DNA of 45,741 nucleotides from Octopus bimaculoides (Eukaryota), in the NCBI RefSeq assembly GCF_001194135.2, contig NC_068999.1, forward strand, positions 20,127,817-20,173,557, read 5' to 3'. Shown here in pieces: positions 4,797-43,972 of this stretch. The position numbers and the translations under genes are program-made. The notes beneath the pieces were generated by a model. The model had not been told where the DNA came from. It ran no database searches and saw nothing but the letters and a program-made list of their open reading frames with translations. Numbering within the stretch: the stretch's first letter is position 1; each line of letters begins with the position of its first letter.

Positions 4797-4946
4797 GGCA
4801 TAGTTGTGGCTGTGTGGTAAGAAGCTTGATTTCCAACCACGTGGTTCCGGCTTCAGTCCCACTGCGAGGCAACTATGCAAGTGTTTTCTACTATGGTCAG
4901 GGGCCGACCAAAGTCTTGTGAGTGGATTTGGTAGACGGAAACTGAA
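4797..4946 (+). mobile_element. SINE family A, 5' half
   Basis: gtggctgtgtggtaag...gtggatttggtagacggaaactgaa matches the family head. Confidence 0.85.
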
Positions 4947-14621: not shown

Positions 14622-14785
14622 GTTACGTGGCTATGTAGTAAGAAGGTTGCTTTCCAGCCACATGGTTCCAGGTTCAGTCCCACTGCATGGGACCTTGGCC
14701 AAGTGTCTTCTGCTATAGCCTCGGGCGGACTAAAGCCTTGCGAGTGGATTTGGTAGGCGGAAACTGAAAGAAGCCCGTCGTATAT
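14622..14785 (+). mobile_element. SINE family A, 5' half
   Basis: Homologous to 27005-27165 and runs into (TA)n and a gap. Confidence 0.85.
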
Positions 14786-16837
14786 NNNNNNNNNNNNNNN
14801 NNNNNNNNNNNNNNNNNNNNNNNNNNNNNNNNNNNNNNNNNNNNNNNNNNNNNNNNNNNNNNNNNNNNNNNNNNNNNNNNNNNNNNNNNNNNNNNNNNNN
14901 NNNNNNNNNNNNNNNNNNNNNNNNNNNNNNNNNNNNNNNNNNNNNNNNNNNNNNNNNNNNNNNNNNNNNNNNNNNNNNNNNNNNNNNNNNNNNNNNNNNN
15001 NNNNNNNNNNNNNNNNNNNNNNNNNNNNNNNNNNNNNNNNNNNNNNNNNNNNNNNNNNNNNNNNNNNNNNNNNNNNNNNNNNNNNNNNNNNNNNNNNNNN
15101 NNNNNNNNNNNNNNNNNNNNNNNNNNNNNNNNNNNNNNNNNNNNNNNNNNNNNNNNNNNNNNNNNNNNNNNNNNNNNNNNNNNNNNNNNNNNNNNNNNNN
15201 NNNNNNNNNNNNNNNNNNNNNNNNNNNNNNNNNNNNNNNNNNNNNNNNNNNNNNNNNNNNNNNNNNNNNNNNNNNNNNNNNNNNNNNNNNNNNNNNNNNN
15301 NNNNNNNNNNNNNNNNNNNNNNNNNNNNNNNNNNNNNNNNNNNNNNNNNNNNNNNNNNNNNNNNNNNNNNNNNNNNNNNNNNNNNNNNNNNNNNNNNNNN
15401 NNNNNNNNNNNNNNNNNNNNNNNNNNNNNNNNNNNNNNNNNNNNNNNNNNNNNNNNNNNNNNNNNNNNNNNNNNNNNNNNNNNNNNNNNNNNNNNNNNNN
15501 NNNNNNNNNNNNNNNNTGTATGTATGTTTGTATAGTCAAATCGAATATTAAAAGTTGAACATTAACAATCGAAGACTAGAAAAAAAAAAGAATATTTAAA
15601 ACTACAAAGTTTTCAACCTTTCTAGCATACATCCTCGTCAAAAAGTCCAGAGAAGAAAAATTCACGAACAGCACGTGTATATTTTTCATTAAATATGAAA
15701 TACATTTATTCTGCACGAACATGTTTTTAGGTGCCCTTTAGGGTGTATATATTAGAGTGTATTTGCATACAGCATAGACGGGCCTCTGTATATTTTCTGT
15801 GTACGAAATTTCACATAGAAATATGTTGATAACCAGAGAGTATGATAGAAGAAGCTGCTATGATGCTACACATTTGGATCGAACCCAGAACAATTAACCT
15901 TCACAACCACAGTTGTTCCCAATATATTATTATAGTATTTTATTTTATTCTCTGTTAGATTAAATTTATTCATCCACGAGGTGGTTCAATTTTCCGTCAT
16001 CATAGTAAGTTTTTCTTTCAACGAAGGAAACCAAATAATCTACTGGATGTCAACAATCTACATTTTCTTTTCTAGATAACCGCTGTTTCAACAGACAATC
16101 TTTCCGTGTAGACGATAGATTTTACAGATATATGTCTAACCTTTGTCTTCGTAGTCTATTATTTACACTTAAATCAATGCTGGATTGTCAGTTTATTTTG
16201 TCTCAGAATAAATCAAATCTTTATAAAATGTAGGTCAATGCATGTGAATCTGAAAATAGTGGGATCTTCTTAAATTATAGCAAATCTACTTGGTGTCTCG
16301 AACGTCCAGAAATAGCAACGAAACGTCCATCACATCACACCCTACTTTCTTTCAACAAAGTTTGTATTCGATAACGTAAACTTAGAAAACTATATATGAA
16401 TAAAAGATGGGATGGTCAAGCACAGGCTGTCAAAGAGAAATACAACAACAGCAAGAACGAAAACAGCACCACCAACAGCAACAATATTAGCAACAATCAA
16501 AAGAATTTCATGATGTTTTATATTTTCTCGGAAAGTTCAGCAGTTATAGTTTCCGAAACCTTCGTAGCAACGAAACAGGAAAATATATCAGAGCCAAATG
16601 TACGGGATGGATACTAAACTCACACATACATCCACCCAGCCACACACACACACACACATTCACACAGTCGCATGCACACATGGAAATGTGTGTGCGTGTG
16701 CGAGTATGTGTGTCTGTGTACCTAAAGGCAGAACTATATACGTCACTAAAGTGAACAAGAGCATTAATAATGAGCAGCAATGTTGCTAGAAATAAGTGTT
16801 AAAACAACTCGAAATCCACTAATGCACTATCTCAATG

Positions 16838-16979
16838 AGCTGACAAGAGAGACAAGCCCCCTACGGTCGTAGATAGAGATAGATCACCTATGATTTCGCA
16901 TTCTGATGCTTAACGCATCTTAATGATCATCAGTTGCTCTCACCACACCTTGGGCTAAACTCATCTCGCCTGGTCAGCT
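16838..16979 (-). ncRNA. Type I hammerhead ribozyme, repeat unit 1 (core intact, proximal stem I partly decayed)
   Basis: Minus strand reads ...gtgagagcaa CUGAUGA ucauuaagaugcguuaagcaucagaaugc GAAA ucauaggugau C uaucucu... Core CUGAUGA is at plus 16927-16933 and GAAA at 16894-16897. Stem II is catt/aatg plus gatgc/gcatc. Stem III is ATCA-tagg-TGAT with an AUC triplet (predicted cut between 16882 and 16881). Extended stem I is closed by agctgaccag/cttgtcagct. Defects: the 10.1-11.1 pair is U.C instead of G-C, and there are two mismatches in proximal stem I. Confidence 0.8.
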
Positions 16980-17181
16980 TAAAAGAACTCTGTTGAAATC
17001 ATATGCTGATTTCTTAAACGGTGGTGTGAGAATTGTAAATAATATGGGTGGCTCATTCGCAATTTTACAACCTAAAGGCAGAAATATATGTGTCACTAAA
17101 GTGAACAAGGGCAATAATCAGGACCAATACTCCTAGGAATAAGAGTCAAAACTCAATAACCACAAAAGCACTATTTGAATG

Positions 17182-17323
17182 AGCTGACAAGAGTGACAGA
17201 TCTCATACGGTCGCAGATAGAGCTAAATCACCAACGATTTCGCATTTTGATGCCCAACGCTTCTTAATGGTTATCATTAGCTCTCAACGCGCCTAGGTTT
17301 AAAGTGATCTTGCCTTGTCAGCT
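17182..17323 (-). ncRNA. Type I hammerhead ribozyme, repeat unit 2 (stem I perfect, core mutated)
   Basis: Same 142-nt fold as unit 1. Stem I is agagcta/tagctct (7 bp perfect) with distal agctgacaag/cttgtcagct (10 bp perfect). Stem III is ATCG-ttgg-TGAT and GAAA is at 17238-17241. The core reads AUGAUAA (C3A, G8A) and position 17 is U, so it is probably inactive. Confidence 0.7.
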
Positions 17324-17729
17324 TATAAGATCTACCTATACATATAAACACATGTATGTGTGTGTCTGTCTCTGTGTGTGTGTTTATATGTATATCATAA
17401 TAAAGAGTAATTAATAACGGATAAGTAACACGGACAAAATGCTGTTTAAGCTCTCTGCAGGTACAAATACACCAACCTAACGTAAGATGTTGATTGGTAT
17501 TGAACTCCGGTTAGTGCGAGAGCTCAAATCCGAATTCGAAGTCCGTCACAAGTCAACTTTTTAAACAAATGGTTGCATTTCCGAGTTAATATGGTATATT
17601 ATACTGAGTGATATATAATCAATACGAAACAAGAGATGTATCTAAACAGCTCCTTTGGCATAGCGTTCAAATTAAAGTAGTAATCGATGTTAATACTTTC
17701 ATCCATCGCAAGAGAGAAGTGATACAAAC

Positions 17730-18663: not shown

Positions 18664-18690
18664 ATTATTATTATTATTATTATTATCATT
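18588..18690. repeat. (GTT)n(ATT)n microsatellite
   Basis: Seen directly. Confidence 0.95.
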
Positions 18691-18692
18691 TA

Positions 18693-18966
18693 GGCGGTGA
18701 GCTGGCAGAGTCGTTAGCGAGCTGGACGAAATGCTTATCCGTATTTCGCCCGTCGCTACGTTCTAAGTTCAAATTCCCCCGAGGTCGACTTTGCCTTTCA
18801 TCCTTTCGGTACTTAATTTATCGACCCCGAAAGGATGAAAGGCAAAGTCGACCTCGGCGGAATTCGAACTCAGAAACGTAGCAGCGAGCAAAATACCGCA
18901 GCGGCAGACCAAAATACCGCTATGCATTTCACCCGGCGTACTAACGTCTTCTCTCAGCTCGCCGCC
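18693..18966. mobile_element. Two SINE family B 5' halves fused tail-to-tail (fold-back)
   Basis: Plus copy 18693-18809 and minus copy 18827-18966. The inner arms 18779-18809 and 18827-18857 are a perfect 31-bp inverted repeat with a 17-nt loop. Confidence 0.9.
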
Positions 18967-21117: not shown

Positions 21118-21881
21118 TTTGTGCAAAAGTGATTGAATTTTTTTTGCTATTTTAAACATTGAGGTTGTGATGTTTATTTAGAGTCTATAATTTTACTTTC
21201 CCATGCAAATTTATATCACCTTTGCTGAATTGCTGAATTGTCAAATATTGTCATTCTTTATTTAATAAGGTAACTTGGAATGGTGGCATTGTGGTACGAA
21301 ATAGGATAGAAGATATAGCGAAGGAATCGGGTTGTAATATTTACCAAGACTTTCACCAACGATGCTTCAACCAGAATTTAGCTCTGTATCACCTTAAGAA
21401 ACAATGTGTTTGAGAAAATAAATCTCTGAAGACTGGTTATGTACCGTTAGATTTTCAATGACAAAATACCGGTGGGAAACTAATAATGAAGATGCCCTAT
21501 GTTCAGCTACTCACAACGTTAAGGAAGTTCTAAAAATTTTAATATTTAAAACCGTTTAACAAATGGATGGTGCTTGAGGTGGGTGGAAATAAACCACATT
21601 GCGTTGTATTTCCGTCCTTTTCAGAACTAAAACGATCTACTTTCTTTTAATTACTTTGTGGCATGTGACGGAAAAGTAATTGTGTAAGAAAATTGAGTTC
21701 ATTCCATCCATTCTGTGGTTAAGCAGATGCAGACCTCTAACATTATTTCAAACTGACGCTGCTATAAATGATGAATACGGTTTGAAAATCGCATAGACTT
21801 TTATATCCTGGCCAAACCACTGCATTAAGAGAGATATATATTCAGGGAAAGTCATTATGCCAATATTATCAACACTATTAA

Positions 21882-22102
21882 GGCGGCGAGCTGGCAGAAA
21901 TGTTAGCACGCCGGGCGAAATACTTAACGGTATTTCGTCTGTCTTTACGTTCTGAATTTAAATTCCGCGGAGGTCGACTTTGCCTTTCAACCTTTCGGAT
22001 TCGATAAATTAAGTACCAGTTGCGTACTGGAGTCGATCTAATAGACTGGCTCCCTCCCCCAAAATTTCGGGCCCTGTCCCTAGATTAGAAAAGAATATTA
22101 TT
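21882..22102 (+). mobile_element. tRNA-derived SINE family B, full length (about 220 bp)
   Basis: ggcggcgagctggcagaa head, B-box-like g(a)atttaaattcc, gaggtcgactttgcctttca body and an attatt tail. Homologous to 18693-18966 and 26036-26236. Confidence 0.88.
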
Positions 22103-26035: not shown

Positions 26036-26339
<304 letters not shown>

Positions 26340-26589
26340 TCAGAACATCGTGCTTGTGGGAACTGCCCATAATCTATGTAAAATGCTGTCAATGTAATCT
26401 CAAATTTTAAAGCAAACTCATAATATTGTTATGTTTTCTTAAACGTTCTCTAGAGCAATACTATGTACAAAACCGAATAAATGACACCGTAGGCATACCA
26501 CCAACATGGCCTTGTAACTTGTTGTCTCTTGAGGTCTCTGGAGGAGACTTGGAGTCAGCTTGCACAAATACAAAGCAAAAGTCAAACAT

Positions 26590-26592
<3 letters not shown>

Positions 26593-26646
<54 letters not shown>

Positions 26647-26670
26647 TATTATTATTATTATTATTATTAT
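26593..26670. repeat. (AAT)n switching to (ATT)n
   Basis: Seen directly. Confidence 0.95.
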
Positions 26671-26684
26671 ACGAAGAATAATTT

Positions 26685-26852
26685 TCCTTCGCCTTTACAC
26701 TCTGAGTTCAAATATGCCGAAATCGACTCTGCCCTTCAGTTTTTCTGGGCCGATAGAATAAATACCACTCAAGTTTTGGGTCCGATGAGATCGACAATCT
26801 CCCTAACCATAAAATGTAAGGGCTGATGCCTATAGTAGAGATGATTATTGTA
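26685..26852 (+). mobile_element. SINE family B, 5'-truncated and diverged
   Basis: ctgagttcaaat.gccgaaatcgactctgcccttca aligns with the family body. Confidence 0.65.
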
Positions 26853-27000
26853 GTTGACATTATTGTTGTTTGTTCTGGTTTTTTTGGGGTTTTTGTCTTT
26901 TTGTAGTAGCTCTTGAAGTTCAGTCTACGACTGACGAATGTCGCTTTATTACAAGGTGTATAGTGTATAGTTATCCAGCCGCTATAAGTATTATTATATA

Positions 27001-27970
27001 GGTGCAGGAGTGGCTGTGTGGTAAGTAGCTTGCCTACCAAACACATGGTTCCGGGTTCAGTCCCATTACGTGGCACCTTGGGCAAGTATCTTCTACTATA
27101 GTCTCGGGCCGACCAGAGCCTTGTGAGTGAATTTGGTAGACGTAAACTGAAAGAAGCCCGTCGTATCTATGTATATATATATATATATNNNNNNNNNNNN
27201 NNNNNNNNNNNNNNNNNNNNNNNNNNNNNNNNNNNNNNNNNNNNNNNNNNNNNNNNNNNNNNNNNNNNNNNNNNNNNNNNNNNNNNNNNNNNNNNNNNNN
27301 NNNNNNNNNNNNNNNNNNNNNNNNNNNNNNNNNNNNNNNNNNNNNNNNNNNNNNNNNNNNNNNNNNNNNNNNNNNNNNNNNNNNNNNNNNNNNNNNNNNN
27401 NNNNNNNNNNNNNNNNNNNNNNNNNNNNNNNNNNNNNNNNNNNNNNNNNNNNNNNNNNNNNNNNNNNNNNNNNNNNNNNNNNNNNNNNNNNNNNNNNNNN
27501 NNNNNNNNNNNNNNNNNNNNNNNNNNNNNNNNNNNNNNNNNNNNNNNNNNNNNNNNNNNNNNNNNNNNNNNNNNNNNNNNNNNNNNNNNNNNNNNNNNNN
27601 NNNNNNNNNNNNNNNNNNNNNNNNNNNNNNNNNNNNNNNNNNNNNNNNNNNNNNNNNNNNNNNNNNNNNNNNNNNNNNNNNNNNNNNNNNNNNNNNNNNN
27701 NNNNNNNNNNNNNNNNNNNNNNNNNNNNNNNNNNNNNNNNNNNNNNNNNNNNNNNNNNNNNNNNNNNNNNNNNNNNNNNNNNNNNNNNNNNNNNNNNNNN
27801 NNNNNNNNNNNNNNNNNNNNNNNNNNNNNNNNNNNNNNNNNNNNNNNNNNNNNNNNNNNNNNNNNNNNNNNNNNNNNNNNNNNNNNNNNNNNNNNNNNNN
27901 NNNNNNNNNNNNNNNNNNNNNNNNNNNNNNNNNNNNNNNNNNNNNNNNNNNNNNNNNNNNNNNNNNNNNN

Positions 27971-32549: not shown

Positions 32550-33346
32550 GCAGGAATGTATGTGTGGTAAGAAACTTGCTTTCACATGGTTCTGGGTTCA
32601 GTCGCACGGTGTGAAATCTTGGGCAAGTGTCTTCTACTATAACCTCGAGCTGAATAAAACCTTGTGAGTGGATTTGGTAGACAGAAACTGTAAAAAAGCC
32701 CGTCGTGTATATATATATATATATATATATATNNNNNNNNNNNNNNNNNNNNNNNNNNNNNNNNNNNNNNNNNNNNNNNNNNNNNNNNNNNNNNNNNNNN
32801 NNNNNNNNNNNNNNNNNNNNNNNNNNNNNNNNNNNNNNNNNNNNNNNNNNNNNNNNNNNNNNNNNNNNNNNNNNNNNNNNNNNNNNNNNNNNNNNNNNNN
32901 NNNNNNNNNNNNNNNNNNNNNNNNNNNNNNNNNNNNNNNNNNNNNNNNNNNNNNNNNNNNNNNNNNNNNNNNNNNNNNNNNNNNNNNNNNNNNNNNNNNN
33001 NNNNNNNNNNNNNNNNNNNNNNNNNNNNNNNNNNNNNNNNNNNNNNNNNNNNNATATATATTAGTTTATGTATATATTAATATTATCTCAGTTTTTATTT
33101 ATATGCGTTTTGCTCCATTTATTGTTATTATTCATATATATATATATATTGTGTGTTTCGTTTTTTGTCCGACCACCATCGCTTGACAACCGATGTTGTT
33201 GTGTTTATGGTCTCATCAACTACCGGTTCGGCAAAAGAGCCCGATAGAATAAGTACTAAGCTTACAAAGAATAAGTCCTGGGTTCGATTTGTTCGGCTAA
33301 AAGCGACACTCCAGCCTAGCTGCAGTCAAATTACTAAACAGGCAAA
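32550..33346 (+). mobile_element. SINE family A, full length, diverged
   Basis: Colinear with 27001-28238 on both sides of the internal (TA)n/gap. Confidence 0.85.
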
Positions 33347-40227: not shown

Positions 40228-40614
40228 TATGTATATATATATATATAGAACGCACACAGTGTAATGCGGTGAATATTTCAGAAATAACTGATTATGCGTT
40301 GGGTCCAGCTGATTAGCTTAAGTATATTTTACATACACAAAGCAAAATCTACACATCTTGGAATATACGCATTCTTAGTTACGTATTCCATGCAGATAAG
40401 CCTGTCTCTGTTATATTTATCACATCCACTGCGTGTATTTTTTTTATAGTGAGTAAATTGAGGTTTAGAGCAATAGCAATGTTCATAGCAAGTGGTAGTT
40501 CAACACCCTTCTGTATTTTATCTATGGTTTTCCTATATATGTGTAAACTTGCTAGGCACTGTATTATTTACATTATTATTACCAATGTTAATGATAATCA
40601 TTTGCTCGTTAATT

Positions 40615-41400
40615 ATTTGCTCTGTATTGAAATTATTTTCTCACTGTTACCTGCCATAATTCGAAGCAAAACGAAAAAAGTTGCAGCGCAGACTTCAACA
40701 TGACGTGCTGAGGCGCTTTATCATGGTAACGCGTGCTGAGGAAGCTGAGGCTATTATGCCAGTCGAGAAACCGGTCCACGTGAGTCCATATACTTGAATG
40801 TATGCTGAGAGTTTGTCATAGCATTTTTGCATTCGGACTGTTGATTTCTGTAGATATTATCAGAGTATTTTGACGATTTCAATAAGAGTGTTGACTGCTA
40901 TTTCCAGCAGGTAGACATACTTAGTATGTTCTTTGATTAAATTTAATCCTTAAGTTATTTAATGCTTTTTGGGGGCCTGCAGTCGCCTATATCATTGATT
41001 CTGTTATTACCATTTTAAAATTGTTACCCTAAATAATAAAAGAGTCAATATCTTCGCAAATTATTTCTCATAGATTATTTTATTTGCCCCGTATTGAAAT
41101 TATTTCACACTGGTGGCTGACATGATTCGGCGCAAAACTGATCAGTTGCAGCGCTGACTTCAACATGACGGCGTTGGGCTCTCTATCGTGGTAACGCGTG
41201 CTGAGGAAGGTGAGGATATTATGCCAGTCCAGAAACAGATCCACGTGAGTCTAGGTACTTGAATGTATGCTGAGAGATTCTCTGAGCTCGTTTGACTTCG
41301 GACGGTTGATTTCTGTAGTTATTATCAGTGTATTTTGGCGATTTAAATAAGAGTTTTGACTGTTATTTCCAGCAGGTACACATACTGTATTATGTCCTTT
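40615..41400. repeat. Diverged tandem duplication, period about 465 bp
   Basis: 40681-40920 versus 41146-41385: 34 substitutions in 240 bp and no gaps. Similarity extends to about 40615/41082. Confidence 0.92.
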
Positions 41401-42735
41401 AGTTAATTATATATATATATATATATATACACCCTATTCATTATGCGTACTACTCCACCTCCGGTATTTGAGTAATAATTTTTCCACCTTATTTCACATT
41501 TTTGTGCTTACTCACTCTCTCTCTCTCACACACACACACGCACATATATATATATATATGTGCGTGTGTGTATATATATATATACACACATATANNNNNN
41601 NNNNNNNNNNNNNNNNNNNNNNNNNNNNNNNNNNNNNNNNNNNNNNNNNNNNNNNNNNNNNNNNNNNNNNNNNNNNNNNNNNNNNNNNNNNNNNNNNNNN
41701 NNNNNNNNNNNNNNNNNNNNNNNNNNNNNNNNNNNNNNNNNNNNNNNNNNNNNNNNNNNNNNNNNNNNNNNNNNNNNNNNNNNNNNNNNNNNNNNNNNNN
41801 NNNNNNNNNNNNNNNNNNNNNNNNNNNNNNNNNNNNNNNNNNNNNNNNNNNNNNNNNNNNNNNNNNNNNNNNNNNNNNNNNNNNNNNNNNNNNNNNNNNN
41901 NNNNNNNNNNNNNNNNNNNNNNNNNNNNNNNNNNNNNNNNNNNNNNNNNNNNNNNNNNNNNNNNNNNNNNNNNNNNNNNNNNNNNNNNNNNNNNNNNNNN
42001 NNNNNNNNNNNNNNNNNNNNNNNNNNNNNNNNNNNNNNNNNNNNNNNNNNNNNNNNNNNNNNNNNNNNNNNNNNNNNNNNNNNNNNNNNNNNNNNNNNNN
42101 NNNNNNNNNNNNNNNNNNNNNNNNNNNNNNNNNNNNNNNNNNNNNNNNNNNNNNNNNNNNNNNNNNNNNNNNNNNNNNNNNNNNNNNNNNNNNNNNNNNN
42201 NNNNNNNNNNNNNNNNNNNNNNNNNNNNNNNNNNNNNNNNNNNNNNNNNNNNNTATATATATATATATATATTTGTCCATGCATAAGTATGCATATATAT
42301 GCATATGTGTGTATTTTATCTGTATATAAAATCTGTTTTCGGAAAAAGCATTATGTGTATTTGAAGAACATTACGTATATAACAGGATGATTTAACATCA
42401 AAAGTTTCACTAATACATAGATATGTAATCACATCTCCTTTATAATAGTAAGAATGTTTAATAAGATTCTATTAAATGCTATTGCACTCACACATGCTGC
42501 AATAATGAGATCTGAAGCGTAGTTATTAAGGTTTATATAAAAGAATTACACATGACTTATACAGACAATTTAACAACTGCTGTAGGTCTGACAGTGCACT
42601 TTCCTTTATATTATAAAAAAGGAAAACGATATATGCTACTATATGAATAGAATATTTATTTTAAAAGCCTTTTAGTTACCACCGAGACTTTGCTTTAGAA
42701 CAAACTATGTAAATAATACGCACACACACACACAA

Positions 42736-43056: not shown

Positions 43057-43395
43057 TCTTCACTGATATTGAAAAGGTGAAAACAAGAAATGTTAATTCT
43101 CTAAATGAAGTATTAACAGTAACTGCACGATAAAGTGTAGTATATTGCCACTTAAGTGGATCGAATATATATATAATGGATCGAATTCAGCAGAGAATCT
43201 TATGGATCACTGTTTCTCAAAATACAATATACACTCTGAAATACAGACTAGTTTGTTTTAGATATCAGGGTATATCCATTGATTTACCTAATCCGCTTAA
43301 GTGGCAATATACTACACTTTATCGTGCAGTTACTGTTAATACTTCATTTAGAGAATTAACATTGCTTGTTTTCACCTTTTTAATATCAGTGAAGA
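43057..43395. repeat. 104-bp inverted repeat (3 mismatches) around a 131-bp spacer
   Basis: 43057-43160 versus the reverse complement of 43292-43395. Confidence 0.95.
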
Positions 43396-43849: not shown

Positions 43850-43972
43850 GATTAGGTAAATCAATGGATATACCCTGATATCTAAAACAAACTAGTCTGT
43901 ATTTCAGAGTGTATATTGTATTTTGAGAAACAGTGATCCATAAGATTCTCTGCTGAATTCGATCCATTATAT
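43850..43972 (-). repeat. Exact 123-bp inverted copy of 43171-43293
   Basis: Base-by-base comparison gives 123/123 identity. Confidence 0.95.

What the first reader, a model, noticed from the sequence alone, without database searches (positions are those of the whole stretch)
16721..17330. Tandem type I hammerhead repeat: candidate cephalopod non-LTR retrozyme (344-nt circRNA unit)
Seen: two diverged ~345-bp units, each folding on the minus strand into the same 142-nt type I HHR. The decay is complementary: unit 1 keeps CUGAUGA/GAAA/AUC, and unit 2 keeps a perfect proximal stem I. Their consensus is therefore a near-canonical ribozyme. Differences between units preserve pairing: stem I cgcg/tgcg versus tgtg/tacg includes a C-G to U-A double change and a C-G to U.G change, and stem III has A-U versus G.U. 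Predicted cleavage sites (17226/17225 and 16882/16881) would release a 344-nt monomer. Established: tandem 150-400 bp repeats with type I HHRs (newt satellite 2, Schistosoma SM-alpha, coral, Mytilus and axolotl retrozymes) are transcribed, self-cleave and circularise. Inference: this is an old copy of an octopus family of that kind. I do not know of one described in cephalopods but cannot check. Caveat: the 10.1-11.1 pair is U.C or C.C rather than G-C in both units.
Basis: partly seen in the sequence, partly recalled or inferred. Interest (0 to 1): 0.92.

Follow-up and report, generated by a model that had tools for sequence, protein, structure and literature searches.

The report
Decayed hammerhead-ribozyme tandem repeat (probable retrozyme fossil)
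Two diverged copies of a ~344-bp repeat each carry the remains of a self-cleaving hammerhead ribozyme, most likely a dead copy of a known class of animal mobile elements (retrozymes) that spread through small circular RNAs; it is an ordinary find of a known kind, and the family behind it could not be looked for.

Summary
On the minus strand, 17333..16720 is a 1.78-unit direct repeat with a 344-nt period and about 80% identity. Each unit opens with a 142-nt hairpin domain.

- **Downstream copy:** it has a complete type I hammerhead core (CUGAUGA / GAAA-U / A-U-C), a 4-bp helix III with a tetraloop, a long helix II, and a helix I with two mismatches.
- **Upstream copy:** it has perfect helices but a dead core (C3>A, G8>A).
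- **Chance:** a descriptor fitted to the motif hits once in the window and never in 40 Mb of random sequence or 1.9 Mb of real control sequence.
- **Family traits that fit:** period, GC content (39.6%), dimer form, and insertion into a (CA)n microsatellite with a 5-nt TAGGT repeat at both junctions all match non-LTR retrozymes (Cervera & de la Peña 2020).

The evidence against is substantial. No Rfam hammerhead model matches, even at E<=10. A covariance model built from four tested retrozyme ribozymes does not match either. The G10.1-C11.1 pair is absent. Covariation amounts to one pair, no better than shuffles. The ribozyme domain is no better conserved than the rest of the unit. I found no other copy anywhere, and the source organism could not be verified.

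Verdict: a probable inactive fossil and a new member of a known kind. Interest is modest.

The parts
16720..17333 (-). Whole array: 1.78 units of a 344-nt direct repeat, 39.6% GC
16990..17333 (-). Upstream full unit (344 nt)
16720..16989 (-). Downstream truncated unit (270 nt). It lacks the 80-nt segment present at 16990-17069.
16838..16979 (-). Downstream 142-nt hairpin domain with an intact hammerhead core. Helix I runs to a 7-10 bp closing stem, AGCUGAC.../...GUCAGCU.
   Evidence: (z = -4.1)
16927..16933 (-). Core box CUGAUGA (C3-A9) of the downstream copy
16898..16926 (-). Helix II of the downstream copy: U.C mismatch at 10.1-11.1, then 4 bp, an AA/AG internal loop, then 5 bp (GAUGC/GCAUC) closed by loop GUUAA
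16882..16897 (-). GAAA (16897..16894), helix III A-UCA/UGA-U with loop UAGG, and C17 at 16882. The predicted cleavage is between 16882 and 16881.
17182..17323 (-). Upstream 142-nt domain. The helices are intact, with a perfect 7-bp proximal helix I, but the core is AUGAUAA (17277..17271; C3>A, G8>A). GAAA is at 17241..17238 and U17 at 17226.
   Evidence: (z = -3.1)
16641..16719 (.). CA/TG microsatellite abutting the 3' end of the array (RNA sense)
17353..17383 (.). TG/CA microsatellite 20 nt from the 5' end of the array (RNA sense)
17334..17338 (-). TAGGT immediately upstream of the array. It repeats the TAGGT that ends the array (16724..16720). This may be a target-site duplication or microhomology.
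   Evidence: interpretation inferred

Best explanation
The array is an old, now inactive dimeric insertion of a non-autonomous retroelement of the non-LTR retrozyme kind.

**How the family works (established in PMC7229834).** The tandem repeat is transcribed, here from the window's minus strand. A type I hammerhead in each unit cuts after position 17. [quoted passage not shown] A host RtcB-type tRNA ligase circularises it. A reverse transcriptase supplied by an autonomous element, probably a Penelope-like element (PLE), copies the circle more than once round. The multimeric cDNA then integrates.

**What is inferred for this locus.**
- A 1.78-unit cDNA landed in a (CA)n microsatellite at a TAGGT site.
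- The two units have since diverged by about 20% with no constraint on the ribozyme.
- The upstream ribozyme is dead because C3 and G8 are both mutated.
- The downstream ribozyme keeps its core but has two mismatches next to the core in helix I and a Y.C mismatch at 10.1-11.1.
- Release of a monomer needs both cuts, so this locus most likely produces no 344-nt RNA today.

**Shown versus inferred.** The repeat, the motif, its rarity by chance and the fold of the domain are shown. The ribozyme ancestry, the mobility and the circular-RNA cycle are inferred.
For: - **Core motif.** The downstream copy has the complete CUGANGA / GAAAY / RUH core with three helices in type I topology.
- **Rarity by chance.** The fitted descriptor gives 1 hit in the window, 0 in 40 Mb of random sequence and 0 in 1.9 Mb of real control strands. 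Even a much looser descriptor expects only 0.02 hits per window.
- **Right context.** The motif sits in a tandem repeat of 344 bp at 39.6% GC, in dimer form. This lies inside the published definition of about 170-400 bp, under 45% GC, dimers to multimers. Most families reach at most seven units, and dimers are common.
- **Structured domain.** The 142-nt domains fold with z = -4.1 and -3.1.
- **Rod versus ribozyme fold.** The stable rod competes with the ribozyme fold, which is 7.4 kcal/mol weaker. From my own knowledge, not tested here, viroid-like and retrozyme RNAs behave the same way.
- **Insertion site.** CA/TG microsatellites lie on both sides and TAGGT at both junctions. PLE-family elements insert preferentially into microsatellites, including (CA)n, and retrozymes are linked to PLEs.
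- **Precedent for the helix II mismatch.** A mismatch at the base of helix II occurs naturally in a cleaving retrozyme hammerhead.
Against: - No Rfam hammerhead family scores at E<=10.
- Model R1, built from four tested retrozyme hammerheads, gives nothing at the site with filters off.
- The highly conserved G10.1-C11.1 pair is absent from both copies.
- Helix II is far longer than the canonical 4 bp, and loop 3 is not palindromic.
- There is only one compensatory pair, which shuffles equal.
- RNAalifold prefers a rod in the centre of the domain.
- The ribozyme domain is no better conserved than the rest of the unit.
- Whole-unit circles are only marginally more stable than shuffles, z = -1.2 to -1.6. 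The chimeric 344-nt monomer is not more stable at all, z = +0.6.
- No second locus was found in the window, and nothing turned up by protein-word or DNA-pattern searches.
- The window contains no RT/EN remnant and no PLE-type minimal hammerhead.
Confidence: 0.6

Rival explanations
1. Coincidence. The array is an ordinary local tandem duplication, or an unclassified repeat that happens to contain a long hairpin. The hammerhead-like core in one copy is a chance match found by a motivated reading.
For: - Both independent covariance-model tests fail.
- G10.1-C11.1 is missing, and only one of the two copies has the core.
- Covariation is at chance level.
- The consensus fold prefers a rod.
- There are no other copies.
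- My descriptor was written after seeing the motif. If very many windows were screened, an expectation of about 0.002 per window is not negligible.
Against: - The full 13-nt core plus helices II and III and the GAAAY/RUH context occurred 0 times in 40 Mb of random sequence and 1.9 Mb of real strands.
- The motif falls exactly in a tandem repeat of the right period, GC content and strand register. That repeat covers under 2% of the window.
- The array is embedded in a microsatellite with matching 5-nt junction repeats, which points to an insertion rather than an in-situ duplication.
Confidence: 0.25
2. The array is a remnant of the tandem pseudo-LTRs of an autonomous Penelope-like element whose coding region has been lost. 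It is not a dedicated non-autonomous retrozyme.
For: - PLE pseudo-LTRs carry type I hammerheads, often with a helix II longer than usual (7-8 bp).
- PLEs form partial tandems and insert into microsatellites.
- Retrozymes are phylogenetically sister to PLE pseudo-LTRs.
- PLE remnants are reported in cephalopods.
Against: [quoted passage not shown] This motif instead has a 4-bp helix III with a tetraloop and a symmetrical mismatch.
- No RT or GIY-YIG ORF remnant appears among the window's ORFs.
- No minimal hammerhead exists elsewhere in the window.
- The 344-nt period matches retrozyme units.
Confidence: 0.1
3. The locus is still active. The downstream hammerhead cleaves on its own, or the two copies act together as a dimer, and the locus yields processed or circular RNA.
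For: - The downstream core is intact, and its helix III is stable enough for monomeric action.
- Natural hammerheads tolerate a mismatch at the base of helix II.
Against: - Releasing a monomer needs two cuts, and the upstream copy has C3>A and G8>A. Both positions are invariant, and A3/A8 is not the known compensating U3-A8 variant.
- The downstream helix I has mismatches at 1.2-2.2 and 1.3-2.3.
- The copies show no sign of constraint.
Confidence: 0.05

Closest known systems
Metazoan non-LTR retrozymes (Cervera & de la Peña 2020, PMC7229834), e.g. Mytilus galloprovincialis Mg353, Acropora millepora Amil224, Ambystoma mexicanum Ax330/Ax353
   Same: - A type I hammerhead lies in each unit of a short, AT-rich tandem repeat.
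- The unit size of 344 bp compares with 350-390 bp in mussel and 330/350 bp in axolotl.
- The dimer form matches.
- The core reads CUGAUGA/GAAAY/RUH.
- Helix III is closed by a tetraloop, as in the invertebrate examples.
- There is a mismatch at the base of helix II, as in HHR_Amex2.
- The ribozyme is embedded in a longer self-paired domain.
   Different: - There is no sequence similarity to those elements.
- Helix II is about 10 stacked pairs with an internal loop, not 4 bp plus a 5-6 nt loop.
- Helix III is 4 bp with a non-palindromic loop.
- Positions 10.1-11.1 are Y.C.
- A covariance model of four of these ribozymes does not detect the site.
- Only one decayed dimer is known here, with no evidence of a family, of expression or of cleavage.
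Hammerheads of Penelope-like elements and Terminons (Cervera & de la Peña 2014, PMC4209133)
   Same: - Both are type I hammerheads in tandemly arranged non-coding repeats of a retroelement.
- Helix II is enlarged and loop 1 is poorly defined.
- Both show microsatellite-biased insertion (PMC8557442).
   Different: - PLE motifs in animals lack helix III or have 1-2 bp with palindromic loops.
- They have a single unpaired base after A9 and a conserved G10.1-C11.1.
- They flank an RT-EN ORF. None of these features is seen here.
Classical satellite hammerheads: newt satellite 2, Schistosoma SM-alpha, cave-cricket pDo500 (Rfam RF00163 Hammerhead_1)
   Same: The tandem repeat units are a few hundred bp long and are transcribed and self-cleaved by a type I hammerhead. 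The strand-specific motif has the same core.
   Different: RF00163 and the other Rfam hammerhead models give no match here, even at E<=10. Those ribozymes have a 4-bp helix II, conserved loop 1-loop 2 contacts and a very short helix III that works as a dimer.

Membership tests
Hammerhead ribozyme (type I) | Conserved core CUGANGA ... GAAA ... UH, with context GAAAY / RUH | tested here: met
   The downstream copy reads CUGAUGA, GAAA-U, A-U-C. The upstream copy fails: AUGAUAA, with C3>A and G8>A.
Hammerhead ribozyme (type I) | Three helices around the core, with helix I open and helices II and III closed by loops | tested here: met
   The constrained fold is feasible in both copies. 96% of cells are paired in a 42-pair common structure, but that structure was derived from these same sequences. 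The downstream helix I has 2 mismatches next to the core.
Hammerhead ribozyme (type I) | G10.1-C11.1 pair at the base of helix II | tested here: not met
   The pair is U.C in the downstream copy and C.C in the upstream copy. PMC4209133 describes this pair as highly conserved. A natural exception, U.U in HHR_Amex2, does cleave.
Hammerhead ribozyme (type I) | Match to the curated covariance models (Rfam Hammerhead_1/3/II/HH9/HH10) | tested here: not met
   There is no hammerhead hit at the gathering threshold on the window, nor at E<=10 on 851 nt or 83 nt.
Hammerhead ribozyme (type I) | Match to a model of experimentally cleaving retrozyme hammerheads | tested here: not met
   Model R1 (coral, mussel and two axolotl sequences taken) gives no match at the site, with default filters or with filters off. 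The model is narrow (4 sequences, 4-bp helix II). The 16-nt longer helix II alone could explain the failure.
Hammerhead ribozyme (type I) | Compensatory changes supporting the helices | tested here: inconclusive
   Only two sequences are available. There is one double change (C-G/U-A), equalled by 249 of 500 shuffles.
Hammerhead ribozyme (type I) | Self-cleavage at position 17 | not testable with these tools
   This needs in vitro transcription of 17345..16700 (minus strand) or of a family consensus.
Non-LTR retrozyme | Hammerhead repeated in short tandem units (~170-400 bp), dimers to multimers | tested here: met
   The period is 344 nt with 1.78 units, and the two predicted cleavage sites are 344 nt apart.
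Non-LTR retrozyme | Low GC content (<45%) | tested here: met
   The array is 39.6% GC.
Non-LTR retrozyme | Monomer RNA predicted to be stable and highly self-paired | tested here: inconclusive
   The 142-nt domain has z = -3.1 to -4.1. Whole-unit circles have z = -1.2 to -1.6 with 55-61% of bases paired. The actual 344-nt cleavage product has z = +0.6.
Non-LTR retrozyme | Multi-copy family dispersed in the genome | not testable with these tools
   There is no other copy in the 45.7-kb window. No searchable collection holds the source genome. Protein-word searches and DNA scans gave only chance matches.
Non-LTR retrozyme | Expression as linear and circular unit-length RNA | not testable with these tools
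   No transcriptome data are accessible.
Non-LTR retrozyme | Co-occurrence with autonomous Penelope-like elements in the same genome | not testable with these tools
   There is no PLE remnant in the window. Cephalopods are reported to carry PLE remnants, but the source organism is unverified.

The most novel reading that the evidence does not exclude
Its hammerhead would be structurally atypical: a helix II of about 10 bp interrupted by an internal loop that could replace loop 2 in the tertiary contact, a stable 4-bp helix III, and a pyrimidine.C mismatch instead of G10.1-C11.1. Younger copies elsewhere in the genome would still make 344-nt circular RNAs.
Probability: 0.3. Interest if true: 0.45.

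Novelty: new member of a known kind. Interest (0 to 1): 0.3.

Why it matters
If confirmed, this would add one more animal lineage to the list of genomes carrying hammerhead retrozymes. In the held literature I found no paper describing a hammerhead or retrozyme in octopus, squid or other cephalopods.

It would also add a hammerhead variant with an unusually long helix II and no G10.1-C11.1 pair. Current covariance models miss that variant, which is a reminder that model-based censuses undercount divergent ribozymes.

It would not change the picture of how these elements work. They are already reported in cnidarians, molluscs (mussel), rotifers, flatworms, annelids, crustaceans, insects and many vertebrates. 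The locus itself is almost certainly dead.

Tried and rejected
**Covariance models**
- Rfam cmscan at the gathering threshold, and at E<=10 on two nested slices, gave only spurious miRNA/snoRNA matches to the flanking CA/TG microsatellites and no hammerhead.
- I built a covariance model from four published, experimentally cleaving retrozyme hammerheads. It gave no match at the site.

**Structure and covariation**
- RNAalifold on the two domains predicted a rod in the centre, not the three-way junction.
- A covariation count gave one double change, at chance level.

**Search for more copies**
- blastn of the unit against the window found none.
- An 18-mer and degenerate patterns were scanned in the viral, metagenome and GTDB genome collections. 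The 142 matches equal the number expected by chance, and none extends beyond about 25 nt.
- A 69-aa pseudo-ORF, and then all six-frame peptides of the array concatenated, were searched against 5.8 billion proteins. Both found nothing.

**Attempts to identify the organism**
- Exact look-up of two window ORFs found nothing on record.
- An ORF from a dispersed repeat matched one 543-nt ENA metagenome scaffold carrying the same two repeat families, presumably host DNA. Its sample identifiers appear in no held paper.

**Other checks**
- A search for a nearby Penelope-like element found no Pfam hit in the ten longest clean ORFs and no minimal hammerhead.
- I tested whether a second direct repeat at 40613-41406 is related. 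It is not, and the weak blast matches to it are chance.
- I rejected the register in which one base after A9 is bulged, as in PLE hammerheads. The 3' strand would then also need an unpaired C, so the arrangement remains a 1x1 mismatch.
Full report
**1. The observation**

Read on the minus strand, window 17333..16720 is a direct repeat with a 344-nt period.
- The repeat finder reports two in-register blocks, 184 nt at 79% identity and 57 nt at 86%, spaced 344 and 350 nt apart.
- blastn aligns 270 nt at 78.9% identity, and MAFFT gives the same picture. TRF did not list the repeat.
- The upstream unit (17333..16990) is complete. The downstream unit (16989..16720) stops at ...CUGCCUUUAGGU and lacks the 80-nt segment 17069..16990. 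The array is therefore 1.78 units long.
- No other copy exists in the window.

- The downstream copy carries CUGAUGA (16933..16927) and GAAA (16897..16894).
- Its helix III is A-UCA/UGA-U closed by UAGG, and C17 is at 16882.
- The upstream copy carries AUGAUAA at the homologous place (C3>A, G8>A) and U17 at 17226.
- The two predicted cleavage sites are 344 nt apart.
- Proximal helix I is a perfect 7 bp upstream. Downstream it has A.A and C.U mismatches at 1.2-2.2 and 1.3-2.3.
- Positions 10.1-11.1 are U.C (downstream) and C.C (upstream).
- Each ribozyme sits in a 142-nt domain closed by AGCUGAC.../...GUCAGCU.

**2. Is it more than chance?**

I wrote a descriptor that the downstream copy just passes. 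It requires:
- an exact CUGANGA and an exact GAAA;
- at least 4 consecutive pairs in helix II, starting at 10.2;
- A15.1-U16.1 plus at least 3 further pairs and a 3-12 nt loop;
- a non-G at position 17;
- at least 5 of the 7 proximal helix I pairs.

The descriptor hits once in the window, at the candidate. It hits zero times in 40 Mb of first-order Markov sequence with the window's composition. It also hits zero times in 0.97 Mb of unrelated real DNA, both strands. A much looser descriptor expects 0.02 hits per window.

My analytic estimate for the fitted descriptor is about 0.002 per window. The descriptor is post hoc, so these figures are optimistic. However, the motif also falls inside a tandem repeat covering under 2% of the window, and that is an independent coincidence.

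The 142-nt domains fold better than dinucleotide shuffles on the minus strand, with z = -4.1 and -3.1.

**3. Tests that failed**

- No Rfam hammerhead family matches, at the gathering threshold, at E<=10 on 851 nt, or on an 83-nt slice.
- I took four experimentally cleaving retrozyme hammerheads (coral Amil224, mussel Mg353, axolotl Ax353 and Ax330) from the supplement of PMC7229834. I aligned them, built model R1 and searched the window. It gave nothing at the site, even with filters off.
- RNAalifold on the two domains keeps the outer helix I but prefers a rod in the centre.
- By nearest-neighbour energies, the hammerhead conformation is 7.4 kcal/mol less stable than the rod.
- Covariation amounts to one double change (C-G/U-A) and a few G.U changes, and 249 of 500 shuffles do as well.
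- The ribozyme domain is no better conserved between the units than the rest, 79.6% versus 82.1%.
- Whole-unit circles are only marginally more stable than shuffles, z = -1.2 to -1.6. The actual 344-nt cleavage product combines diverged halves of helix I and is not more stable, z = +0.6.

Most of these failures have explanations:
- The models expect a 4-bp helix II, while this one is 16 nt longer.
- From my own knowledge, not tested here, viroid-like RNAs commonly favour a rod over the active fold.
- Two dead copies are expected to decay neutrally.

They remain failures, and the G10.1-C11.1 pair described as highly conserved is genuinely absent.

**4. Context**

The window looks like non-coding, AT-rich (34% GC) draft eukaryotic sequence.
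- It is 13.7% N and has microsatellites every couple of kilobases.
- It has no tRNA genes, and none of its ten longest clean ORFs matched a Pfam family above the curated cut-off.
- It has no PLE-type minimal hammerhead.

The array is embedded in CA/TG microsatellite sequence on both sides (16641-16719 and 17353-17383). It is bracketed by the pentamer TAGGT (17338..17334 in the flank, 16724..16720 as the last bases of the array). That pattern suits an insertion with a short target duplication or microhomology better than an in-situ duplication. Penelope-like elements insert preferentially into microsatellites, including (CA)n. Animal retrozymes are thought to be mobilised by PLEs and derived from them.

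**5. What it most likely is**

The best reading (confidence 0.6) is a fossil dimer of a non-LTR retrozyme.

The family mechanism is established in coral, mussel and axolotl:
1. The tandem repeat is transcribed.
2. A hammerhead cuts in each unit.
3. RtcB-type ligation produces a circle.
4. Reverse transcription runs round the circle.
5. A multimeric cDNA integrates.

Unit size (344 nt), GC content (39.6%) and dimer form are inside the published ranges. The helix II base mismatch has a precedent in HHR_Amex2, which has U.U, about 60,000 copies, 22% cleavage as a monomer and efficient cleavage as a dimer.

At this locus the upstream core is dead. A3/A8 is not the tolerated U3-A8 covariant. The downstream helix I is damaged next to the core. 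I therefore infer that the locus releases no monomer today.

Rivals:
- Chance motif in an ordinary repeat: 0.25.
- Remnant of PLE pseudo-LTRs: 0.1. This is disfavoured by the 4-bp helix III, the symmetrical mismatch and the absence of any RT/EN trace.
- A still-active locus: 0.05.

**6. What could not be done**

The decisive test is whether a multi-copy family exists and what its consensus looks like. It could not be run, because no searchable collection contains the source genome.
- DNA-pattern scans of the viral, metagenome and GTDB collections returned only the number of matches expected by chance. None extended beyond about 25 nt.
- Two protein-word searches with pseudo-ORFs of the array found nothing.
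- As a control, an ORF from a dispersed repeat elsewhere in the window found a 543-nt ENA metagenome scaffold carrying the same two repeat families. Host-like DNA is therefore only sparsely represented in that collection.
- The organism remains unidentified.

**7. Novelty and score**

Searches of the held literature found no description of a hammerhead or retrozyme in octopus, squid or cephalopods. Type I hammerhead retrozymes are explicitly reported in molluscs and many other invertebrate phyla, and PLE remnants are reported in cephalopods. A specialist would expect such elements there.

This is at most a new member of a known kind, represented here by one decayed copy. The mildly interesting aspect is the atypical architecture, which escapes covariance models. 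Interest: 0.3.

Noticed in passing
window 40613-40940 and 41080-41406: A second pair of direct repeats: 329 bp at 83% identity, 467 bp start to start, separated by about 140 bp of unrelated sequence. It is unrelated to the hammerhead unit and has no hammerhead core (CTGATCA only).
   Followed up: partly
window 4806-4946, 14627-14783, 27010-27166, 32550-32730: A dispersed repeat family of about 150 bp with four copies at 76-85% identity. Several copies abut N gaps and TA microsatellites. It resembles a SINE or MITE, but ARAGORN found no tRNA-like head.
   Followed up: partly
window 18671-18966, 21864-22047, 26054-26177; locus L143 237-420: A second dispersed family whose copy at 18741-18896 is self-complementary (palindromic). 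It occurs next to the previous family both in the window (26054-27098) and on a 543-nt ENA 'metagenome' scaffold (ERZ23499442, SAMN16869657). That scaffold is therefore probably host DNA from the same or a related animal.
   Followed up: partly
window 17337-17394: A perfect 16-bp inverted repeat (TATACATATAAACACA / TGTGTTTATATGTATA) encloses the TG microsatellite that lies directly beside the 5' end of the array.
   Followed up: no
window 43057-43395 and 43171-43293 / 43850-43972: A 340-bp self-complementary stretch (78% identity), plus a 123-bp inverted repeat that is 100% identical. The perfect identity may reflect a recent event or an assembly artefact.
   Followed up: no
whole window: 6266 of 45741 bases are N. 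They lie in about 20 gaps, nearly all bounded by TA, TG or GA microsatellites, which is typical of a short-read draft assembly. The Rfam 'miRNA' matches at 16640-16720 and 17337-17394 are artefacts of these CA/TG repeats.
   Followed up: yes
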